Source of the DNA: Trichosphaerium sp. ATCC 40318
Lineage: Eukaryota; Protista; Tubulinea
Length of the DNA stretch: 64,000 bases
Direction of reading: 5' to 3'
Assembly (NCBI GenBank): GCA_038496445.1
Contig: JALMLS010000033.1
Location: 1 to 64,000, forward strand
The position numbers and the translations under genes were made by a program. Positions 10,552 through 61,995 of the stretch are shown here, one piece after another; the stretch's first letter is position 1, and each line of letters begins with the position of its first letter. The notes below the pieces were generated by a model. That model did no database searches and was not told the origin of the DNA. It worked only from the letters and a program-made list of their open reading frames with translations.

Positions 10552-11817
10552 CAGATCTACCATTAACCTTGTACAATAAAAAAAAAATAACAATAGTATA
10601 GTTGATGTCATGCTACAAGATCTAGTTTTCGTAACTAAAAACAAACAGAGAACTTTGCCTGATGCCCACAAAATCGAAGGCTCAGTGTGAGAATACATGG
10701 GTAGTGAGAACCTTGTATTTTGTAATAGACATATCCAGAAGCGATTCCATTGCTATCAAAATAAAATTGATAAAAAAGCAATCAATTTTTTCATTTATGC
10801 AACCCATTCAACTGCATCGCACACATCTCAAAGAGAAAGATGGTGGCACATTTTCTGGTATTGATACAGCTTATTTAAGGCTACGGTAGGCATAGTTTAA
10901 GACTGTTTTTTTTCAAATCAACAAACTGACTTTTTTGAAAAGAGAAAAAACGCATTTAGATATTCCTATTTTGTTCTTTCTTTTACTCGAGGGAAGGGTG
11001 CTTGATTAAAGTGCCAAGATCTCAATCAAAAAATTAATCACCAAAGCTCAAAGTGCCTTTAGAATATGCACGCGTTTGATATGAGGAGCAACGGTGCATT
11101 GCAAACTGAAGTGATTCCTTAAATGGAAGCTAAGCTAGACATTATTTTAACCATGAAGAGCCTCTGATATGCTCACCAGAAATCTACACAACTTAGTTGC
11201 ATACGTCCATAATATCTAGTTGTAGCTCTAGTGGGAGCTCAAGCAACGTTTGGCATACTGGTATACGTGTATCAACGGTCGCCATAACACCCCACAAGAG
11301 TGTTAGATAACAAAATACGTACTTCAACAATCAACTTTAATAACACTCCATGACGTACTCAACCAATGGATGCCAGCGGCGCTGATTTTAAAGATTTTCG
11401 TCCATACTCCCCAAGCTCACAACTTGTAACAAAGTGCATTGGAGCAGTCCTATAAGTCTTCTTAGGGTGAATATTTGGGGAGCGCCAACTGGGGCTATTG
11501 AAATCCCTGTACCACATTCCAAAAGGCAAGTTCTTGGATCTTAGATTACAACCCAATGTGTTCTGCGAGATGTCGTGTAACCTCTATAATAGACTGCGTA
11601 CACTTTTTATAGTGTAGTGGTTCGCATTTCAACGACGCTAGATCTTACTTTCCAACGTAAAAATAAAAACTTGCGGACAAAGAGCAAAATGGCTGTGTTT
11701 GTTTCAAACAATATAATGGATTACATTGTACTCAAGGTGTCAAATAATGTAGCGTTTACTTATTTATGACTTTAAATAGCACAAATAAAATACGCAACGA
11801 ACTAGTTAGGTGTATTT

Positions 11818-14800
11818 ATGGCGTCTAATACGCCAAAAAGGAACGGTAAAAAGAGAAATTCTGATTGGCCTTGTCCGTGCGTAAAACGCGTAGTTACGCC
11901 ATATATGACGCGTCTGGATACTAAAAACAACAAGGGAGTGTAATTTCAGAAACTTTGCGAAAAGAACTGAATGTAAGGACTGTTCAACCAAAAAACCAGA
12001 GAATCTAGCATCTCCTAAGCGCACACCTACTCCTAAACAAAAAAAAACGCCAAATAAAACGCCAAAAACGAGTAAAAACCGTCGGAAAAGCAATAATAAA
12101 CGAGATAGAAGATCAAAACAGAGTACGCTCGATAACATTTTTTGCCATCCGTCACTAAACGTCGATTCAACAAAACCAGCACCCAAGAAAGAAAAAAAAG
12201 GGAATTTCTCTGAGAGGTCTCCAAGACGCAAACAAACGCCTAAAAAACAACTCACAGGCCGTGATGTACATCGTAACAACCTAATGAAAGGACTACATAC
12301 TCTTGAAAGGCTACCACCCGGTACGTTTGCCTATTTTACTCCCAGACACTTATTCGAATGATATTTAGCCATGATAGTCGATTTACAACAGAATGCTGTT
12401 GTTGGCAGTGAAATATCTCTAAAGATTTCTCCAATCAGGAAAACTGATCAAAGTTTCGCAACACAAGCTCTTACTCTCCTTAATGTCACTGTCCAAGATA
12501 AGTTCGGGAATCACCTTAAAATGAACTTGGATTATAAACAAGATGCCATAGAGTTAGTGTATACGTTCAAACCAAGGCGTGTAGGCGTTCATTACTTGAA
12601 AGTGAAATACAGCAGTTTTTGCACAAAACTGCAAAAATTTGAAGTTCACTCGAAAGATGCTCCCTTGAAAGATACCAAACTGTCATCTGTAGAACCAGTG
12701 GTTGATGCAACAGCTCCTGAGAATAAGACTGAGGAAAAAACAGCCAGTAAAGATGAAACCATTGAGAACTCTAAAGTCGAAGACAAAAAAGACAAGGATG
12801 GCACTCCTGAGGTATCAGTTACACCCAGTGCAGCGGATTCTGGTGATAAAAAGGAAAAACCAGAAGATGAAACAAAGAAAGAACCACTACCAAAGCCTAA
12901 GATGTCTACACCAAAAAAAAAGACGCCAAAGTGTCTTTTCTCTTCTCAGCTGAAGCAAGATGAAAAATACTACGGTGTTGTTACTTCTAGCAATATGAAG
13001 AAAGATGTTGCCGTTGGTACTCTTTCTTGTACTGAAAAGAATGTGGCATGTACATTTAGCAATGTTAAGATACCTATTGGTGTTGTAGTATCGTTCAAGA
13101 TGACCGCAGGTGCGAGATTAAATTTGACTCAGTTTTTTTTTCGAAATCGACTAACTTGACTTTACCTTAGATGACGAGCATTTCATGCATGCTGAAGTAA
13201 TCGAATTCACTATTCTTGGAGAAATAGATGAGCTTTCTGCCGATAGCCAAGAAGGTACTTTATTACTATCCACAGAAATAACACCATAAGTCAAACCTTT
13301 ATGGTTCTACGTTAATTCATCTTTCTCATTTTCCATAGGAACTGTTAAGATTTATCCTGATTTCTATCACGCTACTGGAAAGACAGAGGATTACACGTAC
13401 TCTTTTAACCATGAATCTCTTGGTGCACAGCGAGGATCTCTGAGTAAAGGAGATCATGTTGGAATTAATTTTTCTCCTGAACGTGTACGACTCTTTAAAA
13501 CATGCTAGCGAACCGGTTTGTTGAATACTAATATGTTCGTGTAGGTAATTACTGGTTTTGATATACACTCAACGCTACGCTACAGGACTGTAGCTAAATG
13601 CAGCGACACAGAAATCAGATTTCAGTTCAAAACAAATCCGTATAGTTACTCTCCTAGTGTTATAACTCATACTCCTCCTCTGCCTATTATGGAAGGAGAC
13701 GTAGTTCTTGTTCGTATTGACTACATGGCATCTGGTATTAATAATGCTGTGACGTCCCTCAAGGTTCGTTTTTGGAATGAAACACCCCTTGAGTTTGTTG
13801 TTGATTTGTTCTTTGTAGTTGGTATCAAGAACTTGCAATGGCCTTGTTAAAGAAACACCTGTAAAGGAAATATCTTTTAAGACAAGTTATGAATCTCCTA
13901 TTACTTATATGATACCTACAAATGAAGAAACAGAAACAAGACCAGAAGATTTAGTTGTTAAACCGGGTATAGGTTTTTTTGTGTGTAACTAATTTGTGTT
14001 AATTTATTCCTTAGGTCTTCTACTTTGTAATATCGCCACCCCAGAAGATGGTATAGAGCTTTTTGTTAAACGCATACATGATATGAAGGAAATACATAAC
14101 CGCTTAAATACAAGAGAATCAAAAGGAAATATTTGTAACCTCGAGTTGAGTACAGGCAAGAAATCTCCTTTAGTTTATTTTGTCACTCTATCTAACTTGC
14201 ATTACTTGTTTAGAAGAACTCGATAGAGGCATCATGGCCGAAACATCGTTTGAGGGTGCTCCATATATCTCTAAAGAGGTCAAAACTGTACTGAAGGAAT
14301 CTGGTTTCGAGCAAATGACAATTATTCAAGAAAGAAGTATTGAGCCTGCACTTCAAGGAAAAAACCTTGTTGGACAAGCGAAAACTGGTTCTGGAAAGAC
14401 ACTTGCGTTTGTTATTCCTTTGATTGAGTTACTTCTACGTGACAAAGAAGGAGAAGGTTGGTAGTTTTTATTCTTTTTTTTTTGTACAGTTTAAGTTAAC
14501 TGGCTTAAGGAACACTTCGTGCTGTTATTTTGACGCCAACATTCATCCTTGCAAAACAAATCAGAAATGATATAGAGAAACTAATTAGACATATGCCTTT
14601 GGGTGTAGCTTTCCGTGCGTTAGGCATATTTTCTTAGTTCGGGTTTTTTTAATGAGTTACTTTTAGGAAGACCTAGCACCTCTGTAGATATCTTTGTAGG
14701 TCCTCCAAGGAGACTTGCTACTTGGGTAAACGAAGGACGTATGAAAGACATTAAAGTATGCATACTTGATGAAGCAGGTACCTGAAGTCTACAAAACAAA

Positions 14801-17800
14801 CAATGCCTTACTTGTTTTGTAGATATATTGTTGCATCCAAGGGACAGTTTTTTGAGTCATGTAAATACGATATTGAGAAGTACTCCCAAAGGTACACTTA
14901 TTAATTATGCTTATCTGTAATATACTTAAACGGAATTAAGGCTCCCTGAGATGGTTCTTTTCAGCTACAATTACAGATCAAGTCAAAAACTTTGCAGCTG
15001 GGGTATTGTTGTTTACCTTTTCTACTTGATTTGATTTTGACATTCTATTCTCTTAGAGCCAAGGAGATCCTTTAATAATTGACACTCTTGATGCTCAATC
15101 AGAAAAGGGTAGAAAGGAGTGCTATGTAGTATATGATCCAGCAGAAAAAATGCGTATTCTTGTAAATATTTTAAAACGACACATTGCGCATGAAAAGGTA
15201 TGCAACATAGACCTTTTATTCTTTTCACATGTGTTTACTCGGTTTTAGATTGTTGTGTTCTTGAACACACGTTTAGGTGTAGATTACTTTGGAGAGATGC
15301 TAAGGGTTCTAGGATTCACGCATGTATTTATAATGAAGGCGGTAAGTGATGTGAAGATGATTGAGTCCTCTTACGAGACATAAAGACTCGCGTGCTTATA
15401 TTTTGATTTGTAGGGTTCCAAGAGCGATAAAGCATATGTAAAGTTTCATAAGGCTTCTTTTGGTATTCTTATATCTACTGATGCTATAGCTCGCGGTATA
15501 GACTTTCCTGGTGTTGGTATTATCATTCAATATGATGTACCTTTTGATACTCAGGTGACGCCAAAATTTCGTTTTGTCTTGTTGCAAAACTCATAATTTG
15601 CTTAGGAGTATTGTCATCGTATTGGCCGTACTGCACGTGGTGTTAATGGGACTGGTATTGCTATTCTGTTTTTACTATCAACTGAGTTGGCATTCGTTGA
15701 TTTGCTTGAGTCTCAAGTTGACAGGACACTTGTTAGATATGAATATCAGCTTGAAGACGATGATACTTACAAAAAGGTAAGTAGACAAGGATTGACTGTA
15801 TGTAAGCTCATTTCTCTTTTTCAGCTTGCTTTAGCGCATAAACACGTACCTGGGATGGTAGGCATGCGTAGAGATGTTGTTAGTAAAGTGTCATATGCGT
15901 ATACTTTGAGAACATCAAAGATTGCTTTTTTGAAGAGTAACTTGAGGCTTGTTCGAGATTCTTTTCCTTTTGTCAATTGTAAGTTTACCAAATTAAACAA
16001 ACAGCAAGTGGATGAAAAACTAAAGGTACTACAATCACGTGAAGTGCCTTGATGGATTTTTTTTCAACAAAAACAAAATAACAATTTCCTAGGACAACAC
16101 TTTTGCTATTGGAGAAGTTCATTACTCTCCTTCACGAGATCATAAATGGGTGGAATTATCACAAGAGAGTGCATCTATTTTTGGAACTTCACGTGTTGAT
16201 GTGACACGTTATATTTCTCAGCTCTTACACGGTGACACGTATGTTGTTTATTGGTAGTTAAAAACCTTGACTTACAGGTATTTATAGCGTTGCTGTGCAA
16301 GTTTACCAACCTCTCCTGAAGCACCTGTCTGAAGGTATTTATGGAGATATTGTATTTAATATGGGTCAATGTAATAGCAAGTCATCAATTGCTGGTTACA
16401 TACGATCTGGTACGGTTAAATGAATGCTCTACGAGTTACTTATTGTTAACTTTTTTTTTTGACAGACAAAACTTTTGTCCCGCTGAACACTCGGTATCAT
16501 AATATGACAGTTGATTCATTTGATGTTTCTAACCTGGTATGTATTATATTCGTCCTCTTGAAATAGTAGAGATAGCCAAGCCAGAAATTTTATTAACATG
16601 GTTTAATTGTAGAAGAAGAAAAAAATGTTGCTTGGTGTAGCAAAGTTTTTGAAATGGAATGGAGATAAGCCTATTTGCAAAATAATATCAGTATCGGATT
16701 CTGCTAATTTGGAGAATTGTGATCAAATTGAAGAAGTTTTGATGACCACATATGATCTAACAAGAACAGAAGAACTAGAAACTGAAGTACACAAAAAAGT
16801 TCAATCCACATTTTTTCTTATCTTTTACTTAATAGTACCAAAAACTCGAAATCACTGATGACCAGTTGGTTGGAAGAAAAGATTTACGTAAGGCTTGCAT
16901 ATTTACTATCGATCCAGATGTACGTTGTTTTGCTGAGTTAGAACAGTGAAGATTTATCAATCAACTTTTTGCTAACTTTTTCCGTTTCCAAGGGTGCAAA
17001 AGATCTTGATGATGCTCTGAGTATAGAAACGTTAGATGATGGTCGTGTTGTTGTTGGTGTACACATAGCAGATGTATCCCAGTTCATTCCTGTTGACAGC
17101 GAATTGGACAAGATAGCAGCTAAGAGGAGTACTACATTCTATTTACGACAATTTTCAGTTCCAATGTTACCAAGGTATGTTCAATTCAAAAAACACTTTG
17201 TGAAAGGCTAACACGTGTTATTATAGAAAATTTAGTGAGAATCTATGTTCTATTCTTCCTGGCGTTGATAGATTCGCTGTATCAGTGTTTATGACATTTA
17301 AAGGGGTAAGCACGAGAAGAATAGTTTGTGTTCTAATAACTGCTTTAGCGAAAGCTTGAGTCATCCACATTTAGCCGTTCTGTGCTTAATACCTGTGTTC
17401 AACTTACTTATGAAGAAGCTCAGAAGTATCTCAATGATGTACTGTTAAGGCATAATATTTTAATCTAACAAAAGGTTTAGGAAATGGATGTTGTTCCACA
17501 AGAACGAATTCATAATGGTAATTTCTCTTTTTCGTTTCTATGTTTTTTCGGACTTACTTTGTTTTAGGGTTTACGGAAAAGGACCTATCAAAGACCATTA
17601 AAGAGCTAAATGCTATATCCGTGATACTAGGGGACCAGAGAAGGAAGAGAGGCGCATGTACGCTGTCAATGATTGAACGTTCTATTGCTTTTTTTTGACG
17701 TTTTTATAAAGGTGAGTTCCATCGTGTTGAACTTGAGGTTCAACTGGACGAAGAAGGTAAACCATTGGCTTTAAAACCGAAAGATAAAAAAGATGCTGGA

Positions 17801-19181
17801 GAACTAGTGGCACAGGTAAGCAAACAAAAACAGTAACTAACTTTTTTCAATGAAACATTATCTAACATAAAAAATAGTTGATGATTCAAGCCAATTGTGA
17901 AGTAGCTTCAGCGCTTGTTAAATCTCCTCTCGTAAAGCATGGTTCGTGTTTATTACAATATTGTTTTCTTAAGCTATTTGATGAGCAAAGAATCATCTTC
18001 TTACGGTTTTATTGTTTAGCTCTTATTCGTATGCAACCTGGTCCAAAGCAAGATCGATTGTGGCCTATTTTAAGACACACTGCATCTACTTTTGGTATTA
18101 ATGTTATTGGTATGGAAGTTAACGCAGCGATGAGGAAAATTAACGAAGTCCTTCCGAGTGACTTATCCCTACAGTACGATTTGTTTTGTTGATATGTTGT
18201 CTTTTTTTTCTCAATAAGTTGGAACCTATTTAACGTGTTATAGGGCATTTAACTTGTTGATCATGAGGGCATTATCTCCAGCAGCATATGGCTTTGTTGA
18301 GAGTACGTATTCTTATTGCTATGTATTCCTCCATTATCATGAGGATAAGATAACAAACAGCTCGCTAACGAGTTGTATAGCTGATGTTGACTGTGCTCAT
18401 TGGGCTCTTGCTGAACCTCTGTATACTCACTTTACATCGCCTATTAGAAGATATGCTGACTTGATAGTTCACAGATTATTGATCCAAATAATTGAAAACA
18501 AAGAAACAACACGTGCGCTAAACAACAAAAAAGAACAAAACCTTTACATTCTATTTTTCTTACGGTTTTGTATAGAAGCTATTCCATCTTCGCTCGCTCT
18601 TGGACAAGTTTCTCAACGTCTCAATGAGCAAAAGAAGAGTACAAGGGATTTAAGATCAGATTTACAAGAATACCTATGCTACGCATACACTATTAAGCCA
18701 AAACTCCTTCACGCAGTTGTTGTTAAGGTATTTTGATTCTGCTCTTTTTTTTTGTTGACATCTCATGCTGACCTTTTCTTTTTTTTTAGCTCTCCAATAG
18801 CTCCTGTGAGATTATGCTACCTATGTTCGATATGAGACTCACCCTTGGTTTTAAGAAAGCCCTTAAATGTGGTTACTTTGAGCATGATTATAAAACTGAG
18901 GTTGCATACCTCTTCTACAAAGAAAAACCAACAAGTGAAAAGGTAACTCAATCAATGTCTCCTTTTCTTTTTTCACTTTTTTGACATGTCTCAGCACGTG
19001 ATATTTTTGCTAATTGTTTTTCTTTTAGTTCATTGCAGGAGAACCTGACTTCCCATTTGTTGTACCTCTATCAAGGTTCACAGAGTTGAGTATTATGCTT
19101 GAAAGAAAAAACAATAACTTTATTGTTTCTGATGTTGGTTTCTTACGTTTTGGTCCAAGATCTGTTGAAGCTATGAAGTAA
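11818..19181 (+). CDS. Multidomain RNA-processing protein: RanBP2 ZnF - filamin-like repeat - OB/CSD-like folds - DEAD-box helicase - RNB exoribonuclease
   Basis: ZnF DWPCP|[16 protein letters not shown]; filamin-like VTVQDKFGN...[17 protein letters not shown]. Helicase motifs: Q (MTIIQ), I AKTGSGKT, Ia ILTPT, II LDEA|[35 protein letters not shown] region: LLHGDTVAV, IFTIDPD|[44 protein letters not shown]. Stop TAA at 19179-19181. Confidence 0.88.
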
Positions 19182-19954
19182 TACTGTATCTGTAATTTGT
19201 AATTATTTTGTAGATCAATTACCAAAAGCTGTAAACAGTTTGAACAATAAACAATAAATCAATGATTAGAACTGCCTCCATCTGTCATTTGGTTGCTGGC
19301 ATTCTGGATGAGTGCTGATTATAAGTGTGCTCAATATTGTCACTTGATGTTTGATATCATACATGATGTTGTTGGATATGATACAGTATTTTAACAGTCA
19401 GACAGTAGCAGTATCATGAAAAACACAGTATTGTGAGAATTGTGAATAGATTCAAAGGACATCTTTGAAATGTGACAGAAATACTGCTGAGTTCAACAGC
19501 AAGTTTACATCCCTTCGATTATTGTTAGCTGCTTACAAGTTTTTTGATCATGAAAAGAAACGCCTGCTATCAAAATATCACTCTTGTCTATTAGTCTTTG
19601 AGCGTGTCCAATTCATAAAGAAAGTGCTGTAAATTCTTGAAAATAAGAAACAGCTCAAGCCTTGTGAGTTATGAGACAGCGCAAGTGAGTGACTAAAAAT
19701 GTGTCAAGCTTACTTTTATGATAAACTTGCTGGTAAGGAAGTTCAAGTGATCAATACTTGCATGTAGTAGAGTTTTTCCATTCAGTAGAAGCCATGTCAC
19801 TGGACATCCAAGATTACAAGAAAAATACACTAGTTTGACTGAACACAAAAAGGCGGCGTCACCTCAATTCAAAGTGCAAATTCACACCACTTATTGGGTA
19901 TACAAAAAGGGAACAACAAACTCTTTGTTGTTGTAAAGGATTTTCCAACAAAAA

Positions 19955-27219: not shown

Positions 27220-30200
27220 ATGTTGAGCTGGATATCTCGTATTGTGGGATATAACACACCTACTACTATAATAGAATGTGCCAAAGAGGGGTATATGGCT
27301 GGTTTGGAGAATTTTGAAGGAGATGTAGACGAATTACGCGGTCCTGACGGGTGTACTGCGTTAATGGTTGCTTGTCAGTGCGTTAACAATTTTCTATGTT
27401 GAAGGGCGTCTAAAAAATTATTTAAATGCGCCACCGCTCTGTAAATAAACTAACATTGTCGTAGACATGGTCAAATAGAATTTGCACAAAAACTGCTTAC
27501 AATGGGTGCTGATCTCGATGCCCGTAGCGGCCAAAAATTCACACCATTGCACGTTGCGGTATACAGCCAGTACGCTAAAAAAGATAGTATCACTTTTTTT
27601 AATAACGCTTTGAATAGAGCCGAAAACGTACTCATAATGTCGCTTTTGAAGCGCGGTGCAGCATTAGAAGCTTGCGACCAAAATGACTTTACACCTTTAC
27701 ACATGGTACGTCATTGTTCTTGAAACGGTATTCAACGTGTTCCTAGGCTTGTACAGAGAATTGCCTCAGACTTGTAAAGCTTCTTATCGAAGAAGGCGCT
27801 GACATCAACGCACAGAGTACGATTAACACGTTAAACTCTACAATTTCAGTGAAACAATCGATCTAAAGCGAGACTTCTTCCTACGGGACTAACTTTATTT
27901 TTTTTTAGCTAACATGGGTTTTACGCCGCTTATTGTAGCATCTTGTAATGGATTTTTGGACATTGTAGATTACTTGATTGAGAAAAAAGCTGACGGAAAG
28001 TTACGAACTTTCAAAGGCTTGGAAACTGCTGCTATCTTCTCAGTACGGTATGCTAGACCCACCAACTTAATATAGTACTAAGGAACTAATATCTTCATTA
28101 GATCTAAACAGACGGAAATCACAAAGCGGTTATTAAAGGCGTACCCTGAAATGTTGGATCTTGCTACAGTACGTCTTTTTTTTTTCTTATTTACGCGTTC
28201 TGTTTTATACGTCTCACATCTTAGTTATGATTTTAAAGAAACTGATTTTTACTAATAGGTATCCGGTGGAAATTGCCTACACTTTGCTGCTCAGTTATCA
28301 GATATTGGTGCGTCATCGAATCCATAAAACTTGTCTGTTTCAAGGTTTTTTTTCGTGGTTTTAACCGTCTTTTTGTAGAAATGGTTGATTACTTATGCTC
28401 TCTGGGTGCTGATATCAACTCTCAAAAGAAAAACGGTGGAACTGTATTGCATATTGCTTGTGAGATGAATAAGGTTGATATGATCACACAACTATTAGAG
28501 AGAGGTGCTAAAATTGAAGCAACATCCGCTTTTGGAACAACAGGTACAAAACACTTATTCCTTTCTTATTTTATTCTTACCATTTTGTTTTACATAGCTT
28601 TACATCATGCTTGTAATAAAAAACGTTATGAGGTTTTGAAAGCACTACTAGAGATTGGTAAAGCATCTGTAGTATGTCAAGATAAAGATGGCCTCACACC
28701 TCTACATGCATTGTGTTCATCTCCAGTACGCTCTTTTTCTATTTTAAACCCAACATCTTAGCTCTTAATGCTATTCATTCGAATTGCACCTTTGGGTTCT
28801 TTTTAACGATAAAGACATGCTCTTTTTTTGCGCATTTGATTAGTACTAATCTAGATCTTCTGTAGAAAGCAGAACACGAAGTCTCTATAAAAATGGCTGA
28901 ACTTCTTTTGAAGAGTGGTGCTGATCCTAATGCTGGTGATAACTCTTCAGCTACTCCATTACATCATGCTGTTTCTAGAAAATATCATTTGGAACTTGTC
29001 AGATTTTTACTTGAGGTACTTAAACATTCTAACATAAACTGTTACCCTCCATTCGTACAACAAAAAACTAAGCTTCAACCGTGCATTTTGCGAAACTTTT
29101 TTTTGCTAGTTTCTTGACTTTCTATTTCATCTTTGATGAATTGTATACCTCTTTATTTGATTATTTACTTATCTATTCAATAGAATAAAGCAAATCCTAC
29201 ACAAGCAGATGACTACGGATGGACACCATTACATTTAACGATGAATATGTACAATCATCCACCAATGGTTGAACTTCTTAAAGAGTATTGTGATAAGAAC
29301 TATCCTGAGTTTATGAAGACATTTGATCCTAAATTAAAGCGTAAAGAACTTGCAGGTAAAGATTATACTTCCAATGAGATGGTTGTTAAAGAAGCAAACG
29401 TCTTTTTCAACAGAAATAAATAGATTACTTTTTTTGAGAAAAAAATAAGAAGCTCCAGTGTTTTTCTTGACCATTTTTTTATTTGGCTGTACTTTGACTT
29501 ACGCAGTCTTAGACAAGTCTGCGTATGCACACCATGAACTATCAAAAGATGAGCGTGATGCTGTACTTGGTGATGTTTCATTAGAAGGCATCGCTGAGAA
29601 GATAAAGACAGGAAAGATAAAAAATGTGATTGTTCTAACAGGTGCTGGTATTTCAACGAATGCTGGTATCCCTGATTTTAGATCACCTGATAAGGGCATG
29701 TATACAACCGATATTGTTCAAAAAATGGCCAAGGTTGGCGGTAAAGTATCATTCTCAGTAGCGAATCTTGTTGCAAATCCAGAAGACTATTACGCAGTTG
29801 TAAGAGCTTTGTTCATGCCTGTTGTCCGTGGAGATATTAAGTACGTTTTTGAGTATATCAATGGTCTTCTTTCAATGTGTCTAAAGTTATTTGTAGGCCA
29901 ACTGCTGCACATCACTTCATAAAGCTTCTGAACGACAAAGGCGTTTTGGTTAGAAACTATACACAAAACATCGATAATTTAGAAGGCGTTGCAAATATTC
30001 CTGCTGATAAAATGGTTGAAGCTCATGGTTCTTTCCGTGGTGCGAGATGCGTAGCTTGTGGTAAACATTCCTCTGATATGGATGCATTTTGGGCAACAGT
30101 TGAGAAAGAGGTGAGAAGCTTACAGCCTTGCCTTTTTTATATTTGAAGATTTCTTACATTTTTAATCCAGGCTGTACCACACTGTGTTCATTGTGGTGGA

Positions 30201-32123: not shown

Positions 32124-32980
32124 ATGGCATCTACTAAGACAACCACTCACAAGTTCTTCCATGATGTTAACTTCTGGAACAACAGAGCTGGGACAATGTC
32201 AAAAAAGACTATCGCCAATATTTTCTTGCGAGACGGTTTATTGAAAATTATAAAGGCAATGCCTCAGCCAAAGCAAGGAGAAGTAGTTTTAGATATAGGC
32301 TGTGGCGACGGGAATGGTCTGATTGTACTCGAAGAGATATATGGAGACAGTGGCGCTTCCTTTCATGGTGTCGATATAGCGCCTAAAATGATTGCTTGGT
32401 GTGAAGGCTTAAAACTTCCAAATGTAACAAAACTTGAGGTACTACAATCACTAGATTATGCAGTCGCTAACATAGATACAAGGTCCAAGATGCATGTAAG
32501 ATGGATAAATTAAAGTCAAACGCATATCATCACGTGATAAGCACTTTTTGTTTGGAATTTGTTACGGATCACGTGAGCGCATTCAAAGAACTTTTTAGAG
32601 TGATGAAGAAAGGGTCAAAAGCGTATGTTTTAGCATGGTCAGGGAACACTCCATTTGCACCTGTTCAAGAAATTGCAAAGAAGATTGCACCTGAAAACCC
32701 TAGGTCATCAATGGGATATAATAAACCTATCCTAAGCAACAAGGAATACTTCAAAGATGTTGTAACAAAAGCAGGTTTTCCCAATTTTACTATTGACGAA
32801 GTGGATGTTGAATATCAAGGAACATTCGATGCTTGGTATACTCTTATTGAACCAGAAATTGTGAAGCATCTTACTTTGGAGAACGTGGAAGGGTTAAAGA
32901 AAGTGGCTAGAGATACCATAAACGAACTATTTGGTATTGATATGGAAAGTTTACTCAAAAGTGTCCGTGTTGGATACTGA
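32124..32980 (+). CDS. Class I SAM-dependent methyltransferase (two exons)
   Basis: VLDIGCGDG, GVDIAPKMI and AFKELFRVMKKG motifs; one short intron at ~32440-32482 joins the two ORFs. Confidence 0.88.
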
Positions 32981-55096: not shown

Positions 55097-57039
55097 CTAA
55101 TTGAATGATTCAAATATTACAGTAAGGTCTGGATTCGATTCATTAAGAAAGTTTCCATGGTAAGTAGCACGAATATCAGATGGATCTTCATTCTGGTCTA
55201 CGAAAAGAATCGTCAAAGAAAACAAAACTGAAACCTTGCAACTAGTATGCATGCTATGTTAATGCGTACCTGGGGGCTTTGTTATTTTAAAGCGTCTCAC
55301 GATACTACTAATCATTACGACAAGCTCTGTCAGTGCAAGGTTCTGACCAATACAGTTTCTTGGACCAGCACTGAATGGAATCCAAGAAAAAGAGCTTGCG
55401 TCGTTGTTAATAAATCTATCTGGATTGAATATATTTGGGTTTTCCCTGTGAGTTAACAGTTAAATAAAACCTCAAGTATTACACCACATACCATAGTTCT
55501 GGGTCACGCATCACAAAGAATATTGTCAGCAGAACGTTTTGACCGGAACTTATTGTTGTATTTCCCACGGTAAGGTCTTTGTTTAGAGCACGTGGTAAAT
55601 TGATGACAGGTGGATACATTCTCAGAGTCTCCCTGTGATAAATAAAATTTAGGTTCTGACCAATATAAAGAGAGCGTACTTGATGAATGCTTTTGTGTAC
55701 TTGAACTCATGAAGTTGTTGCTTTGTTGATATTGTTTCACCATCACCTTATTTGTTCATTTAGTTCATTGTCATTGGCTGGAATTGTACATACTTAGTAG
55801 GTCATTCGCCTCTTGTTTTAGTTTTTCTTGAATTTCTGGATACCTTGACATGACGTACAGTGCCCAAGCAAGTGTGATAGATGTCTAGGTTCGTATTAAT
55901 AGTAAAACTGGTATGTGACATACTGTGTCAAATCCTGCAAAGAAAAATAACAGAGCTTCATTTGCTATTGTAGCATCTGTAAGAATATCTGGATTGTCAG
56001 ATTGTGCCAACAACATCAGAGTTATCAAGTCATCACAAGGATTTCCTTCGTTAATGCGTCTACGTCTGTCATCAATAGCAGCAAATAACTTACCAAGAAG
56101 TTCAGCTTTGAGTTGACCATACTGTCTACAGACTTGTTTAGCAAGAAAGTGGAATAAAACACGAATCTCGTACTTGTATTCAAAGAGGCCAGCTGAGAGC
56201 AACTTGTACTTAAGATGTGTACCTAATGATTTCAAGAGTTTAGGGAAGTGATTCGCCAACCAGACATGATCGAAATCGCCACCAAATATCAAAGAAACAA
56301 TGATACGCATTGTTATCAGTGACGTTTCTTTCTTTGGTGTTGCTTCAAATTTACCATTTTTCATTTTCTTTTCAATATCGTCTAAACCCTTCGCTGTCAT
56401 CTCTGATATCATTGGAATCATCGCTTTCAATGATTTAAAGTGAAACACGGGTGTCAGTAATCTCCTACGGGCCTTCCAAACATCATCTGTTTGCATAGTT
56501 ACAAGACCATCTCCAAACATGTCTCCGATCTACACAAAAAGTAAGTCTGACATTGTTATTTTGACCGAGAAAAAAATGTCGTTTCGTGATGCCGTTTGGT
56601 TTGCACGTGATAAACATGACGTACAAGTTTATAATTTGCCAGATTCTTAGGCACGTTATCGCGTAATAAGAGCTGTTTAATTATACTACTATCGCTGACG
56701 CTGATAATATAGTGACCACTGACGGGGTGAATGCCCATTACTGTCACTTTATGGAGTTTGTTCTCTTTTGTCTTTGGCCATTTAATAATTCGGTTTACAT
56801 AATATCTTTGTGGTATTAGTTCTGTAGTACTTGTGAAGTGTAAAAACATCTACAACGTACGTTTTAGGATCAGTACCAAAACTCCAAGGGAATATTAAAG
56901 CGTTAGGATGCCGTGGTAGTCCAAGGTACCAGAATTTAACTTTTAGAAAACTGACAGCCTTCTTGCCATACACACGTAAGAAAGCTGCAATAAGCGCTAA
57001 CACGACGACAATTAAAATGAGTACAGCTGATGTGTCCAT
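55097..57039 (-). CDS. Cytochrome P450 (CYP4-clan-like), copy A
   Basis: N-terminal TM anchor, WKARRRLLTPVFHF, AGFDT (I-helix), ETLR, FNPDRF and the heme motif FSAGPRNCIG. Confidence 0.93.
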
Positions 57040-60069: not shown

Positions 60070-61995
60070 TTAATTGATTGGTTCGAATAGTACCGTAAGG
60101 TCTGGATTTGGTTCAGTAAGAAATTTACCATGGTAAGTAGCACGAAAATCTGATGGATCTTCATTCTGGTCTACGAAAAGAAACGTCAGAGACAACAAAA
60201 ATAAAGTTTTCAAGTTTAAATTGAATAATTACCTGAAGGCTTTGTTATGTTAAAGCGTCTCACAACACTGCTAATCAATATAACGAGCTCTGTTGTTGCA
60301 AGGTTCTGGCCAATACAGTTTCTTGGACCAGCACTGAATGGAATCCAAGAAAAAGAGCTTGCGCCTGTTGTAATAAATCTATCTGGATTGAATGTATTTG
60401 GGTTTTCCCTGTGAGTTAACAGTTAACTAAAACCTCAAACAATACACCACATACCATAGTTCTGGGTCACGCATCACAAAGAATATGGTCAGAAGGACGT
60501 TTTGGCCTGCCTTTAGATTTGTATTGCCCAACATTGTGTCTTTATTTAGAGCACGTGGTAAATTGATGACAGGTGGATACATTCTCAGAGTCTCCCTGTG
60601 ATAAATAAGATTTAGGTTCTGTGGGGTTTTAAAGAGAACATACTTGATAAATGCCTTGGTGTACTTGAACTCAGTAAGTTGTTGCTTTGTTGATATTGTT
60701 TCACCATCACCTTATATGTTCATTTAGTTCATTGTTACTGGCTGGAATTGTACATACTTAGTAGGTCATTCGCCTCTTGTCTTAGTTTTTCTTGAATTTC
60801 TGGATACCTTGACATGACGTACAGTGCCCAAGCAAGTGTAATAGATGTCTAGGTTCGTATTAATACTACAACTTGATAAAATGACATACTGTGTCAAATC
60901 CTGCAAAGAAGAATAACAGAGCTTCATTTGCTATTGTAGCATCTGTAAGAATATCTGGATTATCAGATTGTGCCAACAACATCAGAGTTATCAAGTCATC
61001 ACAAGGATTTCCTTCCTTAATGCGTCTACGTCTATCTTTGATAGCAACATACAACTTGTCCATTAATTCAGCTTTAAGCTCACCAAACTTTCTAAACACC
61101 TTTGTCAGATGTTAAGCTATATAAACGAATTGTACTTGTAGTTGTAAGCCCACCGAAGAGTAAATTATATTGAAGATGCGTGGCCAACGACCTCAAGAGT
61201 TTAGGGAAGTGATTCGCCAACCAGACATGATCGAAATCGCCACCAAATATCAAAGAAACAATGATACGCATTGTTATCAGCGATGTTTCTTTCTTTGGTG
61301 TTGCTTCAAATTTACCATTTTTCATTTTCTTTTCAATATCATCTAAACCCTTTGCTGTCATCTCTGATATCATTGGAATCATCGCTTTCAATGATTTAAA
61401 GTGAAACACAGGTGTCAGTAATCTCCTTCGGGTTTTCCAAACAGCATCTGTTTGCATAGTTACGAGGCCATCTCCAAAAAGTGTTCCAATCTAAAATCAC
61501 GTTCGTCAAAAAAAACAGGAAAAAATTATCCAAAAATAAAAGTATGATCACGTGATAAGGAAAAACAGTTGAAGATTTGCAGGTGGGAACAACGTACAAG
61601 TTTATAATTATCCATGTTCTTAGGTGCGTTATCACGCATTAAAAGCTGTTTAATCATACCACTATCGCTAATACCAATATTGAAGTCACCATTGATTGGA
61701 TGGATATCCAACACAGCTAATTTATGGAGTTTATTGTCTTTGTCTTTGGCCAACGAGAAATACGGTTTACATAATATCTAGCTTGTATTAGTTTACTGGT
61801 AACATAAACATCTACAACGTACGTTTTAGGATCTGTACCAAAGCTCCAAGGGAACGCCAACGCGTCTGGATGGCGTGGAAGTCCAGGGTACATGAATTGA
61901 ACCTTTAGAAAGCTTATAACCTTCTTGCCGTACACACGAAAGAAAGCTATAACGAAGAGTACTATGACAAGCAGTATGAGTGTAGTTGTGGCCAT
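60070..61995 (-). CDS. Cytochrome P450 (CYP4-clan-like), copy B
   Basis: Same motifs and intron positions as copy A; stop TAA at 60070-60072. Confidence 0.93.

What the first reader, a model, noticed from the sequence alone, without database searches (positions are those of the whole stretch)
11818..19181. Single-gene 'degradosome': DEAD-box helicase fused to an intact RNB exoribonuclease, with a RanBP2 ZnF, filamin-like repeat and OB folds
Seen in sequence: the exons can be joined in frame from MASNTPK...[21 protein letters not shown] through a complete DEAD-box core ([23 protein letters not shown]). The frame continues with no stop via ...VDEKLK|[12 protein letters not shown]...LLHGDT|VAVQ into a DIS3L2/RNase R-like module that keeps the acidic catalytic motif (TIDPDGAKDLDD) and [13 protein letters not shown]. 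Established: helicase-assisted 3'-5' decay usually uses separate proteins (Suv3-Dss1, Mtr4 or Ski2 with the exosome, RhlB-PNPase), and the helicase-RNB fusion I know of, animal HELZ2, uses an SF1 UPF1-like helicase. I do not know of an SF2 DEAD-box-RNB fusion. Inference: a self-contained machine that recognises ssRNA (RanBP2 ZnF, OB folds), unwinds it and degrades it, possibly in antiviral or anti-transposon RNA defence, convergent with HELZ2.
Basis: partly seen in the sequence, partly recalled or inferred. Interest (0 to 1): 0.92.

Follow-up and report, generated by a model that had tools for sequence, protein, structure and literature searches.

The report
DEAD-box helicase fused to RNB exoribonuclease
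One intron-rich gene of an unidentified eukaryote appears to encode an RNA-unwinding DEAD-box helicase and an RNA-degrading DIS3L2-like exonuclease in a single 1766-residue chain; I found no description of this pairing, but no transcript yet covers the joint between the two halves.

Summary
On the + strand, from ATG 11818 to TAA 19179-19181, 36 exons joined by 35 GT-AG introns (42-86 nt) give an uninterrupted 1766-aa frame. RNA-run contigs show 19 of the 35 introns as splice joints.

Single exons match Pfam Zn_ribbon_RanBP (partial), Filamin (below threshold), DEAD, Helicase_C and RNB. The helicase exons are closest to Has1/DDX18. The RNB exon is closest to DIS3L2. All DEAD-box motifs, the four RNB aspartates and the [13 protein letters not shown] motif are intact. 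All 11 differences in a related strain's transcripts are synonymous, nine in the helicase half and two in the RNB half.

The helicase-RNB joint, intron 16026-16092, has no RNA coverage, so the fusion rests on sequence logic:
- The first RNB exon encodes CSD1.
- A TAG at the acceptor closes its frame, and it has no in-frame ATG.
- The intron is typical in size, signals and composition.
- No AATAAA follows the TGA at 16050.

I found no orthologue and no other DEAD-box-RNB fusion in 160 RNB loci or in the literature. However, the one search without a length limit went on the N-terminal exon, so the architecture check is incomplete.

Verdict: probably a real single-chain helicase-exonuclease, a new variant of a known principle (HELZ2, Suv3-Dss1, RhpA-RNase R). 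A defence role is untested. This scan did not find it before on other DNA.

The parts
11818..19181 (+). Whole coding region: 36 exons, 35 GT-AG introns, 1766 aa
   Evidence: Model built from the sequence and from RNA joints. In-frame TAG at 11803-11805 just upstream of the ATG. AATAAA at 19246 and 19253 after the stop.
11863..11983 (+). RanBP2-type zinc finger (aa 16-36), split by intron 1 (11877-11934)
   Evidence: The full W-x-C-x2-C-x3-N-x6-C-x2-C pattern appears only after splicing. Pfam Zn_ribbon_RanBP E 1.4e-3 on the exon-2 half. It carries N-F-A-K-R, like ssRNA-binding fingers (inference; PMC6384913).
11984..12319 (+). Basic, S/T/P-rich low-complexity stretch (aa 37-148), 29% K+R
   Evidence: Composition. 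A possible nuclear or nucleolar targeting role is inference only.
12371..12643 (+). Filamin/Ig-like repeat (aa ~150-240)
   Evidence: Pfam Filamin E 1.1e-4, 23.3 bits, below the gathering score of 26.9. The single-sequence AlphaFold model was too poor to test it (pLDDT 43.7).
12659..12928 (+). K/E/D-rich linker (aa 246-335)
   Evidence: 44% K+E+D.
12929..14230 (+). Unassigned region (aa 336-645), exons 3-9
   Evidence: No Pfam hit on its exons and no internal repeat. RNA contigs confirm introns 4, 6 and 7.
14249..15692 (+). DEAD-box helicase core (aa 652-990) with motifs Q, I, Ia, Ib, II, III, IV, V and VI
   Evidence: Pfam DEAD 8.3e-12 and Helicase_C 5.6e-9. Nearest solved structures are Has1/DDX18, E 1.5e-15 and 2.7e-5. 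Introns 9-13 and 16 are seen in RNA. Ia (PTFILAKQ) and Ib (GPPRRL) diverge from consensus.
15693..16025 (+). Helicase C-terminal extension and linker (aa 991-1085), exon 17 end plus exon 18
   Evidence: Intron 17 (15777-15824) is seen in RNA. No Pfam family, and DUF4217 was not detected.
16026..16092 (+). Junction intron 18 (67 nt, AAG|GTACTA...TTTCCTAG|GAC, phase 0); contains the TGA at 16050-16052
   Evidence: GC 31.3% against an intron mean of 31.5% and an exon mean of 38.4%. Stop eight codons in if retained. No RNA coverage.
16093..16786 (+). CSD1 and CSD2 of the RNB module (aa 1086-1256)
   Evidence: Collinear alignment with RNase R, DIS3L2, DIS3 and Ssd1 ORFs starts at aa ~1097. The frame of exon 19 is closed by TAG 16090-16092 and has no in-frame ATG.
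16851..18484 (+). RNB catalytic domain (aa 1262-1605) with [15 protein letters not shown] and [13 protein letters not shown]
   Evidence: Pfam RNB 2e-22 and 2e-15. Nearest solved structure is DIS3L2, E 1.9e-16. Introns 23, 24, 27, 28, 31, 32 and 33 are seen in RNA.
18650..19178 (+). C-terminal S1-like region (aa 1640-1766)
   Evidence: Aligns with the S1 / Dis3l2_C_term regions of the reference ORFs. No Pfam hit at exon level. Introns 34 and 35 are seen in RNA.

Best explanation
This is one gene encoding one 1766-aa polypeptide. In order it carries:
- an N-terminal RanBP2-type zinc finger;
- a basic low-complexity stretch;
- an Ig/filamin-like repeat;
- an acidic/lysine-rich linker;
- about 300 unassigned residues;
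- a Has1/DDX18-like DEAD-box helicase core;
- after a 95-residue extension, a complete DIS3L2-type 3'-5' exoribonuclease module (CSD1-CSD2-RNB-S1) with no PIN domain.

Shown here: the frame is continuous, both catalytic cores keep their defining residues, both halves are transcribed and spliced, and both are under purifying selection.

Inferred: intron 18 is spliced, so the helicase sits directly N-terminal to CSD1, at the mouth of the funnel through which RNB enzymes take up the RNA 3' end.

Proposed mechanism (inference from the families):
1. The zinc finger and cold-shock/S1 domains bind single-stranded RNA.
2. The DEAD-box core uses ATP to open short duplexes or strip proteins next to the 3' end.
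3. The freed 3' end is threaded into the RNB channel and hydrolysed processively.

The result would be ATP-stimulated decay of structured or protein-covered RNA without an exosome. The cellular substrates are unknown.
For: - Continuous ORF with 35 canonical short introns. Contigs of two RNA runs show 19 of them.
- Domains at exon level and motifs.
- Nearest solved structures are Has1/DDX18 for two separate helicase exons and DIS3L2 for the RNB exon.
- The spliced RNB module aligns collinearly from CSD1 (aa ~1097) to S1 (aa ~1718) with RNase R, DIS3L2, DIS3 and Ssd1 ORFs. It groups with the eukaryotic references in a tree (SH-aLRT 99).
- Junction evidence:
  - Exon 19 begins with CSD1-coding sequence.
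  - Its frame is closed by the TAG of the acceptor, and it has no in-frame ATG.
  - Intron 18 matches the other introns in length, GT-AG signals and GC content.
  - There is no AATAAA or ATTAAA between the TGA at 16050 and 17597, and none that is canonical until 19246.
- Flanking gene-free stretches are about 1.2 kb upstream and 0.8 kb downstream, against 67 nt at the joint.
- All 11 substitutions in run X1 are synonymous third-position changes, 9 in the helicase and 2 in the RNB. Random changes would be synonymous 23% of the time.
- Precedents that a helicase helps an RNB enzyme on structured RNA: HELZ2 (PMC10516660), Suv3-Dss1 (PMC5758563) and RhpA-RNase R (PMC8136821).
Against: - No read or contig covers 15900-16700, so splicing of intron 18 is not observed.
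- No orthologue was found in any collection, so conservation of the fusion cannot be tested.
- The RNB module sits on a very long branch (3.2 changes per column, at most 28% identity). That could mean relaxed or changed function, or errors in the 16 introns placed without RNA support.
- Helicase motifs Ia and Ib depart from consensus.
- DIS3L2 and RNase R can unwind RNA on their own (PMC10023572, PMC5714204), so a helicase is not obviously needed.
- A misassembly at the joint was not checked against DNA reads.
Confidence: 0.7

Rival explanations
1. There are two products rather than one. The helicase mRNA keeps intron 18 and ends at TGA 16050, giving about 1093 aa. The RNB protein comes from an internal promoter inside the helicase gene's 3' part. 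It would start at an in-frame ATG of exon 18 (M1029 or M1032) and use the same donor.
For: No RNA covers the joint. If intron 18 is retained, the frame stops after eight codons. Exon 18 has in-frame Met codons. Run X2 covers only the RNB 3' part.
Against: No polyadenylation signal follows the TGA. The intron is indistinguishable from the 34 others. Exon 19 cannot start translation by itself. X2's coverage of the 3' end only is what a 3'-biased library gives for one long mRNA. Run X1 covers both halves at similar low depth. This reading needs an extra promoter and an unusual termination.
Confidence: 0.12
2. The chain is a single fusion, but one half is not an enzyme. Either the RNB module acts as an RNA-binding platform, like Ssd1, or the DEAD-box core acts as an ATP-dependent RNA clamp. 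The protein would then regulate or hold RNAs rather than degrade structured RNA.
For: The RNB module lies on a very long branch with at most 28% identity to any reference. Motifs Ia and Ib are divergent. Ssd1 shows that RNB proteins can lose catalysis (PMC8934651 abstract).
Against: All four catalytic Asp residues and the Arg-containing motif IV are kept, whereas the catalytic centre is lost or altered in inactive members such as Ssd1. DEAD, SAT and motif VI are intact. Substitutions are only synonymous.
Confidence: 0.13
3. The fusion is an artefact. Either the assembly joined two loci near 16.0-16.1 kb, or my model joins exons that are not joined in vivo.
For: Sixteen introns rest on consensus and homology alone.
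Against: The phase-0 to phase-0 join falls exactly where CSD1 homology begins, with a canonical donor and acceptor 67 nt apart. A chance assembly joint would rarely give this. The neighbouring introns 17 and 23 are RNA-confirmed.
Confidence: 0.05

Closest known systems
HELZ2 (animals)
   Same: A single chain that combines helicase domains, zinc fingers and an active RNB exoribonuclease preceded by cold-shock domains. Helicase and nuclease cooperate to degrade structured RNA in an ATP-dependent way (PMC10516660).
   Different: HELZ2 has two SF1 UPF1-like helicase domains flanking the RNB, and different zinc fingers. Here there is one SF2 DEAD-box core, N-terminal only, next to a DIS3L2-like RNB. 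The two are not homologous as fusions.
mtEXO: Suv3 helicase + Dss1 RNB exonuclease (yeast mitochondria)
   Same: An SF2 helicase feeds the RNA 3' end into an RNB enzyme through one continuous channel. The complex degrades structured RNA, but the nuclease alone does not (PMC5758563).
   Different: mtEXO consists of two separate proteins. Suv3 is a translocating, Ski2-like/DExH-type helicase (own knowledge), not a DEAD-box protein, and the complex is mitochondrial.
RhpA DEAD-box helicase - RNase R complex (Helicobacter pylori)
   Same: The same two enzyme families. A DEAD-box helicase enables an RNB exonuclease to degrade double-stranded RNA (PMC8136821).
   Different: A non-covalent bacterial complex. 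That RNase R has lost its own helicase-related domains, whereas here CSD1, CSD2 and S1 are all present.
DIS3L2
   Same: It is the nearest solved structure to the RNB exon (E 1.9e-16). It shares the CSD1-CSD2-RNB-S1 order, the lack of a PIN domain and the complete acidic catalytic motif.
   Different: Here the N-terminus is replaced by 1085 residues that include a helicase. The sequence is very divergent (at most 28% identity, long branch). The Pfam Dis3l2_C_term domain was not detected at exon level. DIS3L2 unwinds structured RNA by itself (PMC10023572).
Has1 / DDX18 DEAD-box helicases
   Same: They are the best solved-structure matches for both the motif Q-I exon and the motif VI exon.
   Different: The C-terminal DUF4217-type region was not detected. 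Motifs Ia and Ib are divergent. There is a long N-terminal extension and a C-terminal nuclease. Orthology was not tested.

Membership tests
DEAD-box RNA helicases (SF2) | Motifs Q, I (AxTGSGKT), II (DEAD), III (SAT) and VI (HRIGRTGR) in the canonical order | tested here: met
   [24 protein letters not shown] and HRIGRTARG at aa 670-973. Pfam DEAD 8.3e-12 and Helicase_C 5.6e-9 on single exons.
DEAD-box RNA helicases (SF2) | RNA-contact motifs Ia (PTRELA) and Ib (TPGR) | tested here: inconclusive
   PTFILAKQ and GPPRRL occupy the expected positions. They are recognisable but differ from the consensus.
Has1/DDX18 subfamily | Closest relatives are Has1/DDX18, and the C-terminal DUF4217-type domain is present | tested here: inconclusive
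   The top PDB hits for two exons are Has1/DDX18. Exon 18 has no Pfam hit even at E<=1. No helicase phylogeny could be made.
RNase II/RNB family | RNB domain with four catalytic Asp (D...D.DD) and the motif IV Arg ([11 protein letters not shown]) | tested here: met
   [15 protein letters not shown] and [13 protein letters not shown]. Pfam RNB 2e-22 and 2e-15.
RNase II/RNB family | Two N-terminal cold-shock domains and a C-terminal S1 domain around the RNB | tested here: met
   Collinear alignment of aa 1097-1718 with RNase R, DIS3L2, DIS3 and Ssd1 ORFs. Pfam did not detect these domains on single short exons.
DIS3L2 subfamily | No PIN domain or CR3 motif, and closer to DIS3L2 than to DIS3/Rrp44 | tested here: met
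   The match to a DIS3-like ORF covers only its residues 474-978, not its PIN domain at 144-274. In PDB, DIS3L2 scores E 1.9e-16 against 2.9e-9 for Rrp44.
DIS3L2 subfamily | Dis3l2_C_term-type S1 domain and uridine-specific contacts | tested here: inconclusive
   No Pfam hit on exons 34-36. The contact residues were not assessed. The tree places the module at the base of the eukaryotic references on a long branch.
HELZ2 family | [quoted passage not shown] | tested here: not met
   There is a single SF2 DEAD-box core, N-terminal to the RNB. Nothing follows the S1-like end at aa 1766.
RanBP2-type zinc finger | W-x-C-x2-4-C-x3-N-x6-C-x2-C (PMC6384913) | tested here: met
   [21 protein letters not shown] at aa 16-36 after splicing of intron 1. 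The Pfam partial hit (E 1.4e-3) is below the gathering score because the finger is split between exons.
Filamin/ABP280 repeat | Pfam Filamin at or above the gathering score, with an Ig-like fold | tested here: inconclusive
   23.3 bits against a cut-off of 26.9. The AlphaFold single-sequence model has pLDDT 43.7 and is unusable.

The most novel reading that the evidence does not exclude
This is the first natural SF2 DEAD-box-RNB fusion: a self-contained, exosome-independent, ATP-driven 3'-5' RNA degradation machine. It would have arisen independently of animal HELZ2 and of the two-protein Suv3-Dss1 and RhpA-RNase R systems. It would give a one-chain model for how a non-translocating DEAD-box helicase is coupled to a processive exonuclease.
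Probability: 0.45. Interest if true: 0.72.

Novelty: new variant of a known kind. Interest (0 to 1): 0.62.

Why it matters
Helicase-assisted 3'-5' RNA decay is normally built from separate proteins. The one well-studied single-chain case, HELZ2, uses a different helicase superfamily. DEAD-box proteins do not translocate; they open short duplexes locally. A natural covalent DEAD-box-RNB chain would show how that activity is geometrically coupled to a processive nuclease. It would offer a compact system for structural and single-molecule work. It would also be a third independent origin of the same solution, which would argue that helicase-RNB coupling is strongly favoured. The practical value depends on first proving the transcript and the two activities.

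Tried and rejected
1. A greedy dynamic-programming gene model over-extended exons. I replaced it with RNA joints plus manual curation.
2. Only two weak RNA runs hold the locus.
3. I spent the one search without a length limit (1.84 billion representatives) on the N-terminal 246-aa exon, hoping for full-length orthologues. It gave only two weak, unrelated hits. In hindsight an RNB or helicase exon would have tested the architecture better.
4. The search for homologous proteins:
   - The 148-aa stop-free stretch across exons 17-18 gave nothing.
   - A 1487-aa Ssd1-like ORF from a metagenome locus, used as a length-compatible proxy for the RNB region, gave only basidiomycete Ssd1.
   - A neighbouring methyltransferase-like exon, tried to identify the organism, gave nothing.
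5. Metagenome scan with exon 18: no relative.
6. Metagenome and GTDB scans with the RNB core exon returned 160 loci. None has a DEAD-box ORF within 6-10 kb. The one helicase neighbour, in L119, is RecQ.
7. The ESM Atlas returned RNB fragments for the RNB exon. For a P450 exon, tried to identify the organism, it returned only generic P450 clusters.
8. Rfam on the window: no match.
9. Internal-repeat search of aa 336-645: none.
10. The AlphaFold model of exon 3 was unusable.
11. The spliced protein has no reference in the tools. Whole-protein Pfam, structure prediction and database searches were therefore left out rather than typed in.
12. I considered a bacterial (RNase R) origin of the nuclease, because a bacterial ORF aligns over the longest range. 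The tree places the module with the eukaryotic references, though on a long branch.
Full report
**What is there**

The window is eukaryotic DNA of about 37% GC. Coding sequence is broken into many short exons. I started from the ATG at 11818, which has an in-frame TAG directly upstream. From there I built a model of 36 exons and 35 GT-AG introns of 42-86 nt (mean 59). It ends at TAA 19179-19181 and gives a 5301-nt CDS of 1766 aa with no internal stop.

The first, automatic model over-extended exons. I corrected it with splice joints seen in contigs of two public RNA runs and by reading the sequence. Joints or loose ends in those contigs support 19 of the 35 introns. The other 16 rest on canonical signals, frame and homology.

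The RanBP2 finger and the DEAD motif each become complete only after an intron is removed. For DEAD, that intron is RNA-confirmed.

**Domains**

The spliced protein has no reference in the tools, so I tested single exons.

Pfam results:
- Zn_ribbon_RanBP on the exon-2 half of the finger, E 1.4e-3.
- Filamin, E 1.1e-4, below the gathering score.
- DEAD, 8.3e-12.
- Helicase_C, 5.6e-9.
- RNB, 2e-22 and 2e-15.
- The other exons gave nothing.

Against solved structures:
- The motif Q-I exon and the motif VI exon both hit Has1/DDX18 first.
- The RNB core exon hits DIS3L2 first (E 1.9e-16), ahead of RNase R, DIS3L1 and Rrp44.

In a script I aligned the spliced model with RNB-family ORFs taken from fetched metagenome loci. 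Residues ~1097-1718 align collinearly from CSD1 through CSD2 and RNB to the S1 region of RNase R-, DIS3L2-, DIS3- and Ssd1-like proteins. There is no match to the PIN domain of the DIS3-like reference. The four catalytic aspartates and motif IV are kept. All DEAD-box motifs are present, with Ia and Ib somewhat divergent.

A maximum-likelihood tree puts the RNB module with the eukaryotic references (SH-aLRT 99). The branch is very long (3.2 changes per column, at most 28% identity), so its exact place is unsure.

Residues 336-645 remain unassigned. They have no Pfam hit and no internal repeat.

**Is it one gene?**

This is the key point, and RNA data do not settle it. Neither run covers 15900-16700. 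The sequence argues for a true fusion:
- Exon 18 ends in phase 0 at AAG|GTACTA, and exon 19 starts at TTTCCTAG|GAC.
- The 67-nt intron falls within the range of the others in length.
- Its GC content is 31.3%, against an intron mean of 31.5% and an exon mean of 38.4%.
- It contains the TGA at 16050, which is the eighth codon if the intron is retained. Most of the other introns also carry early in-frame stops.
- Exon 19 encodes the start of CSD1. Its frame is closed by the acceptor's own TAG (16090-16092), and it has no in-frame ATG.
- An independent RNB gene would therefore lack a start codon. It would also have to fit a 3' end, a promoter and a 5' UTR into 40 nt.
- No AATAAA or ATTAAA lies between 16050 and 17597. 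The canonical signals sit at 19246 and 19253, after the final stop.
- The gene-free stretches flanking the gene are about 1.2 kb and 0.8 kb.

I put the probability of a single spliced ORF at about 0.85.

**Selection**

Contigs of run X1 come from a close relative or another allele (95-99% identity). They differ from the window at 11 exonic positions. All 11 are synonymous third-position changes in my frame, nine in the helicase half and two in the RNB half. Random changes there would be synonymous 23% of the time. Both halves are therefore expressed, correctly framed and under purifying selection. This argues against a decaying remnant on either side.

**Relatives and novelty**

I found no orthologue:
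- The N-terminal exon has no relative among 1.84 billion representative proteins.
- The exon 17-18 stretch has none among 5.8 billion.
- Exon 18 has none in metagenome contigs.

Scans with the RNB core exon returned 80 metagenomic and 80 GTDB loci. None has a DEAD-box ORF within the fetched flanks. The only helicase neighbour is a RecQ.

Four literature searches found no DEAD-box-RNB fusion. The HELZ2 paper calls its helicase-RNB organisation a unique combination (PMC10516660).

This check is incomplete. After, no tool could search the conserved domains against full-length proteins without a length filter. A proxy search returned only fungal Ssd1. Some of those database entries are themselves gene-model fusions with unrelated enzymes, so database architectures would need scrutiny in any case.

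The organism is unidentified. Other first-stage notes guess an amoeba-like genome. Its proteins seem poorly represented in the collections.

**Mechanism**

RNB enzymes take the RNA 3' end through a funnel formed by CSD1, CSD2 and S1. Here the helicase is attached directly N-terminal to CSD1 through about 95 residues.

By analogy, I propose that the DEAD-box core locally opens duplexes or removes proteins at the 3' end, and that the RNB then degrades the freed strand. The analogues are:
- mtEXO, where Suv3 feeds the 3' end into Dss1 through one channel (PMC5758563).
- H. pylori, where the DEAD-box helicase RhpA lets RNase R degrade double-stranded RNA (PMC8136821).
- HELZ2 (PMC10516660).

The finger has the N-F-A-K-R segment typical of ssRNA-binding RanBP2 fingers. 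PMC6384913 uses the aromatic position as its marker; the rest is my own knowledge. It may therefore add RNA recognition. The basic N-terminus and the Has1/DDX18 likeness hint at a nuclear or nucleolar site.

All of this is inference. A defence role has no support here.

**Verdict**

The single-chain reading is well supported by sequence logic but not yet by a transcript across the joint. It is best filed as a new variant of the known helicase-plus-RNB principle, not as a member of the HELZ2 family. Interest is moderate to high, pending the simple RT-PCR test.

Noticed in passing
window 15777-15824, 17942-18019, 18303-18380, 18513-18575: Four introns of the gene (17, 30, 32, 33) have lengths that are multiples of three and contain no stop in frame. 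Retaining any of them would insert 16-26 residues without breaking the frame. Introns 17, 32 and 33 are nevertheless seen spliced in RNA contigs.
   Followed up: partly
window 13923-17097 (11 positions): Contigs of RNA run X1 differ from the window at 11 exonic sites, and all 11 are synonymous. X1 is therefore another allele, strain or close species that carries the same gene under purifying selection.
   Followed up: yes
window 55888-56529 (-) and 61095-61490 (-): Two nearly identical cytochrome P450-like exons lie about 5 kb apart, which looks like a recent tandem duplication.
   Followed up: no
window 32124-32977 (+): A methyltransferase-like two-exon gene carries a GxGxG SAM-binding motif. 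Its second exon has no relative at E<=1e-5 among 5.8 billion proteins. Like the finding's N-terminal exon, it suggests a poorly sampled lineage.
   Followed up: partly
window 29449-30143 (+): Sirtuin (SIR2)-like exons carrying [15 protein letters not shown] and QNIDNLE-type motifs.
   Followed up: no
window 11806-12279 (-): A 157-aa ORF lies antisense to the lysine-rich exon 2 of the gene. It is most likely a by-product of the low-complexity coding strand and not a gene.
   Followed up: no
L119:5191-9473: In an Oscillospiraceae MAG, an RNase R gene is followed 15 nt later by a RecQ helicase gene on the same strand. This is the only helicase neighbour among the 160 RNB loci, and it is a DNA helicase, not a DEAD-box protein.
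   Followed up: yes
P0021, P0029 (database proteins): Some fungal 'DIS3-like exonuclease 2' entries of about 1810 aa also carry an isocitrate/isopropylmalate dehydrogenase domain (PF00180). These are probably gene-model fusions, a caution for any architecture search in databases.
   Followed up: no
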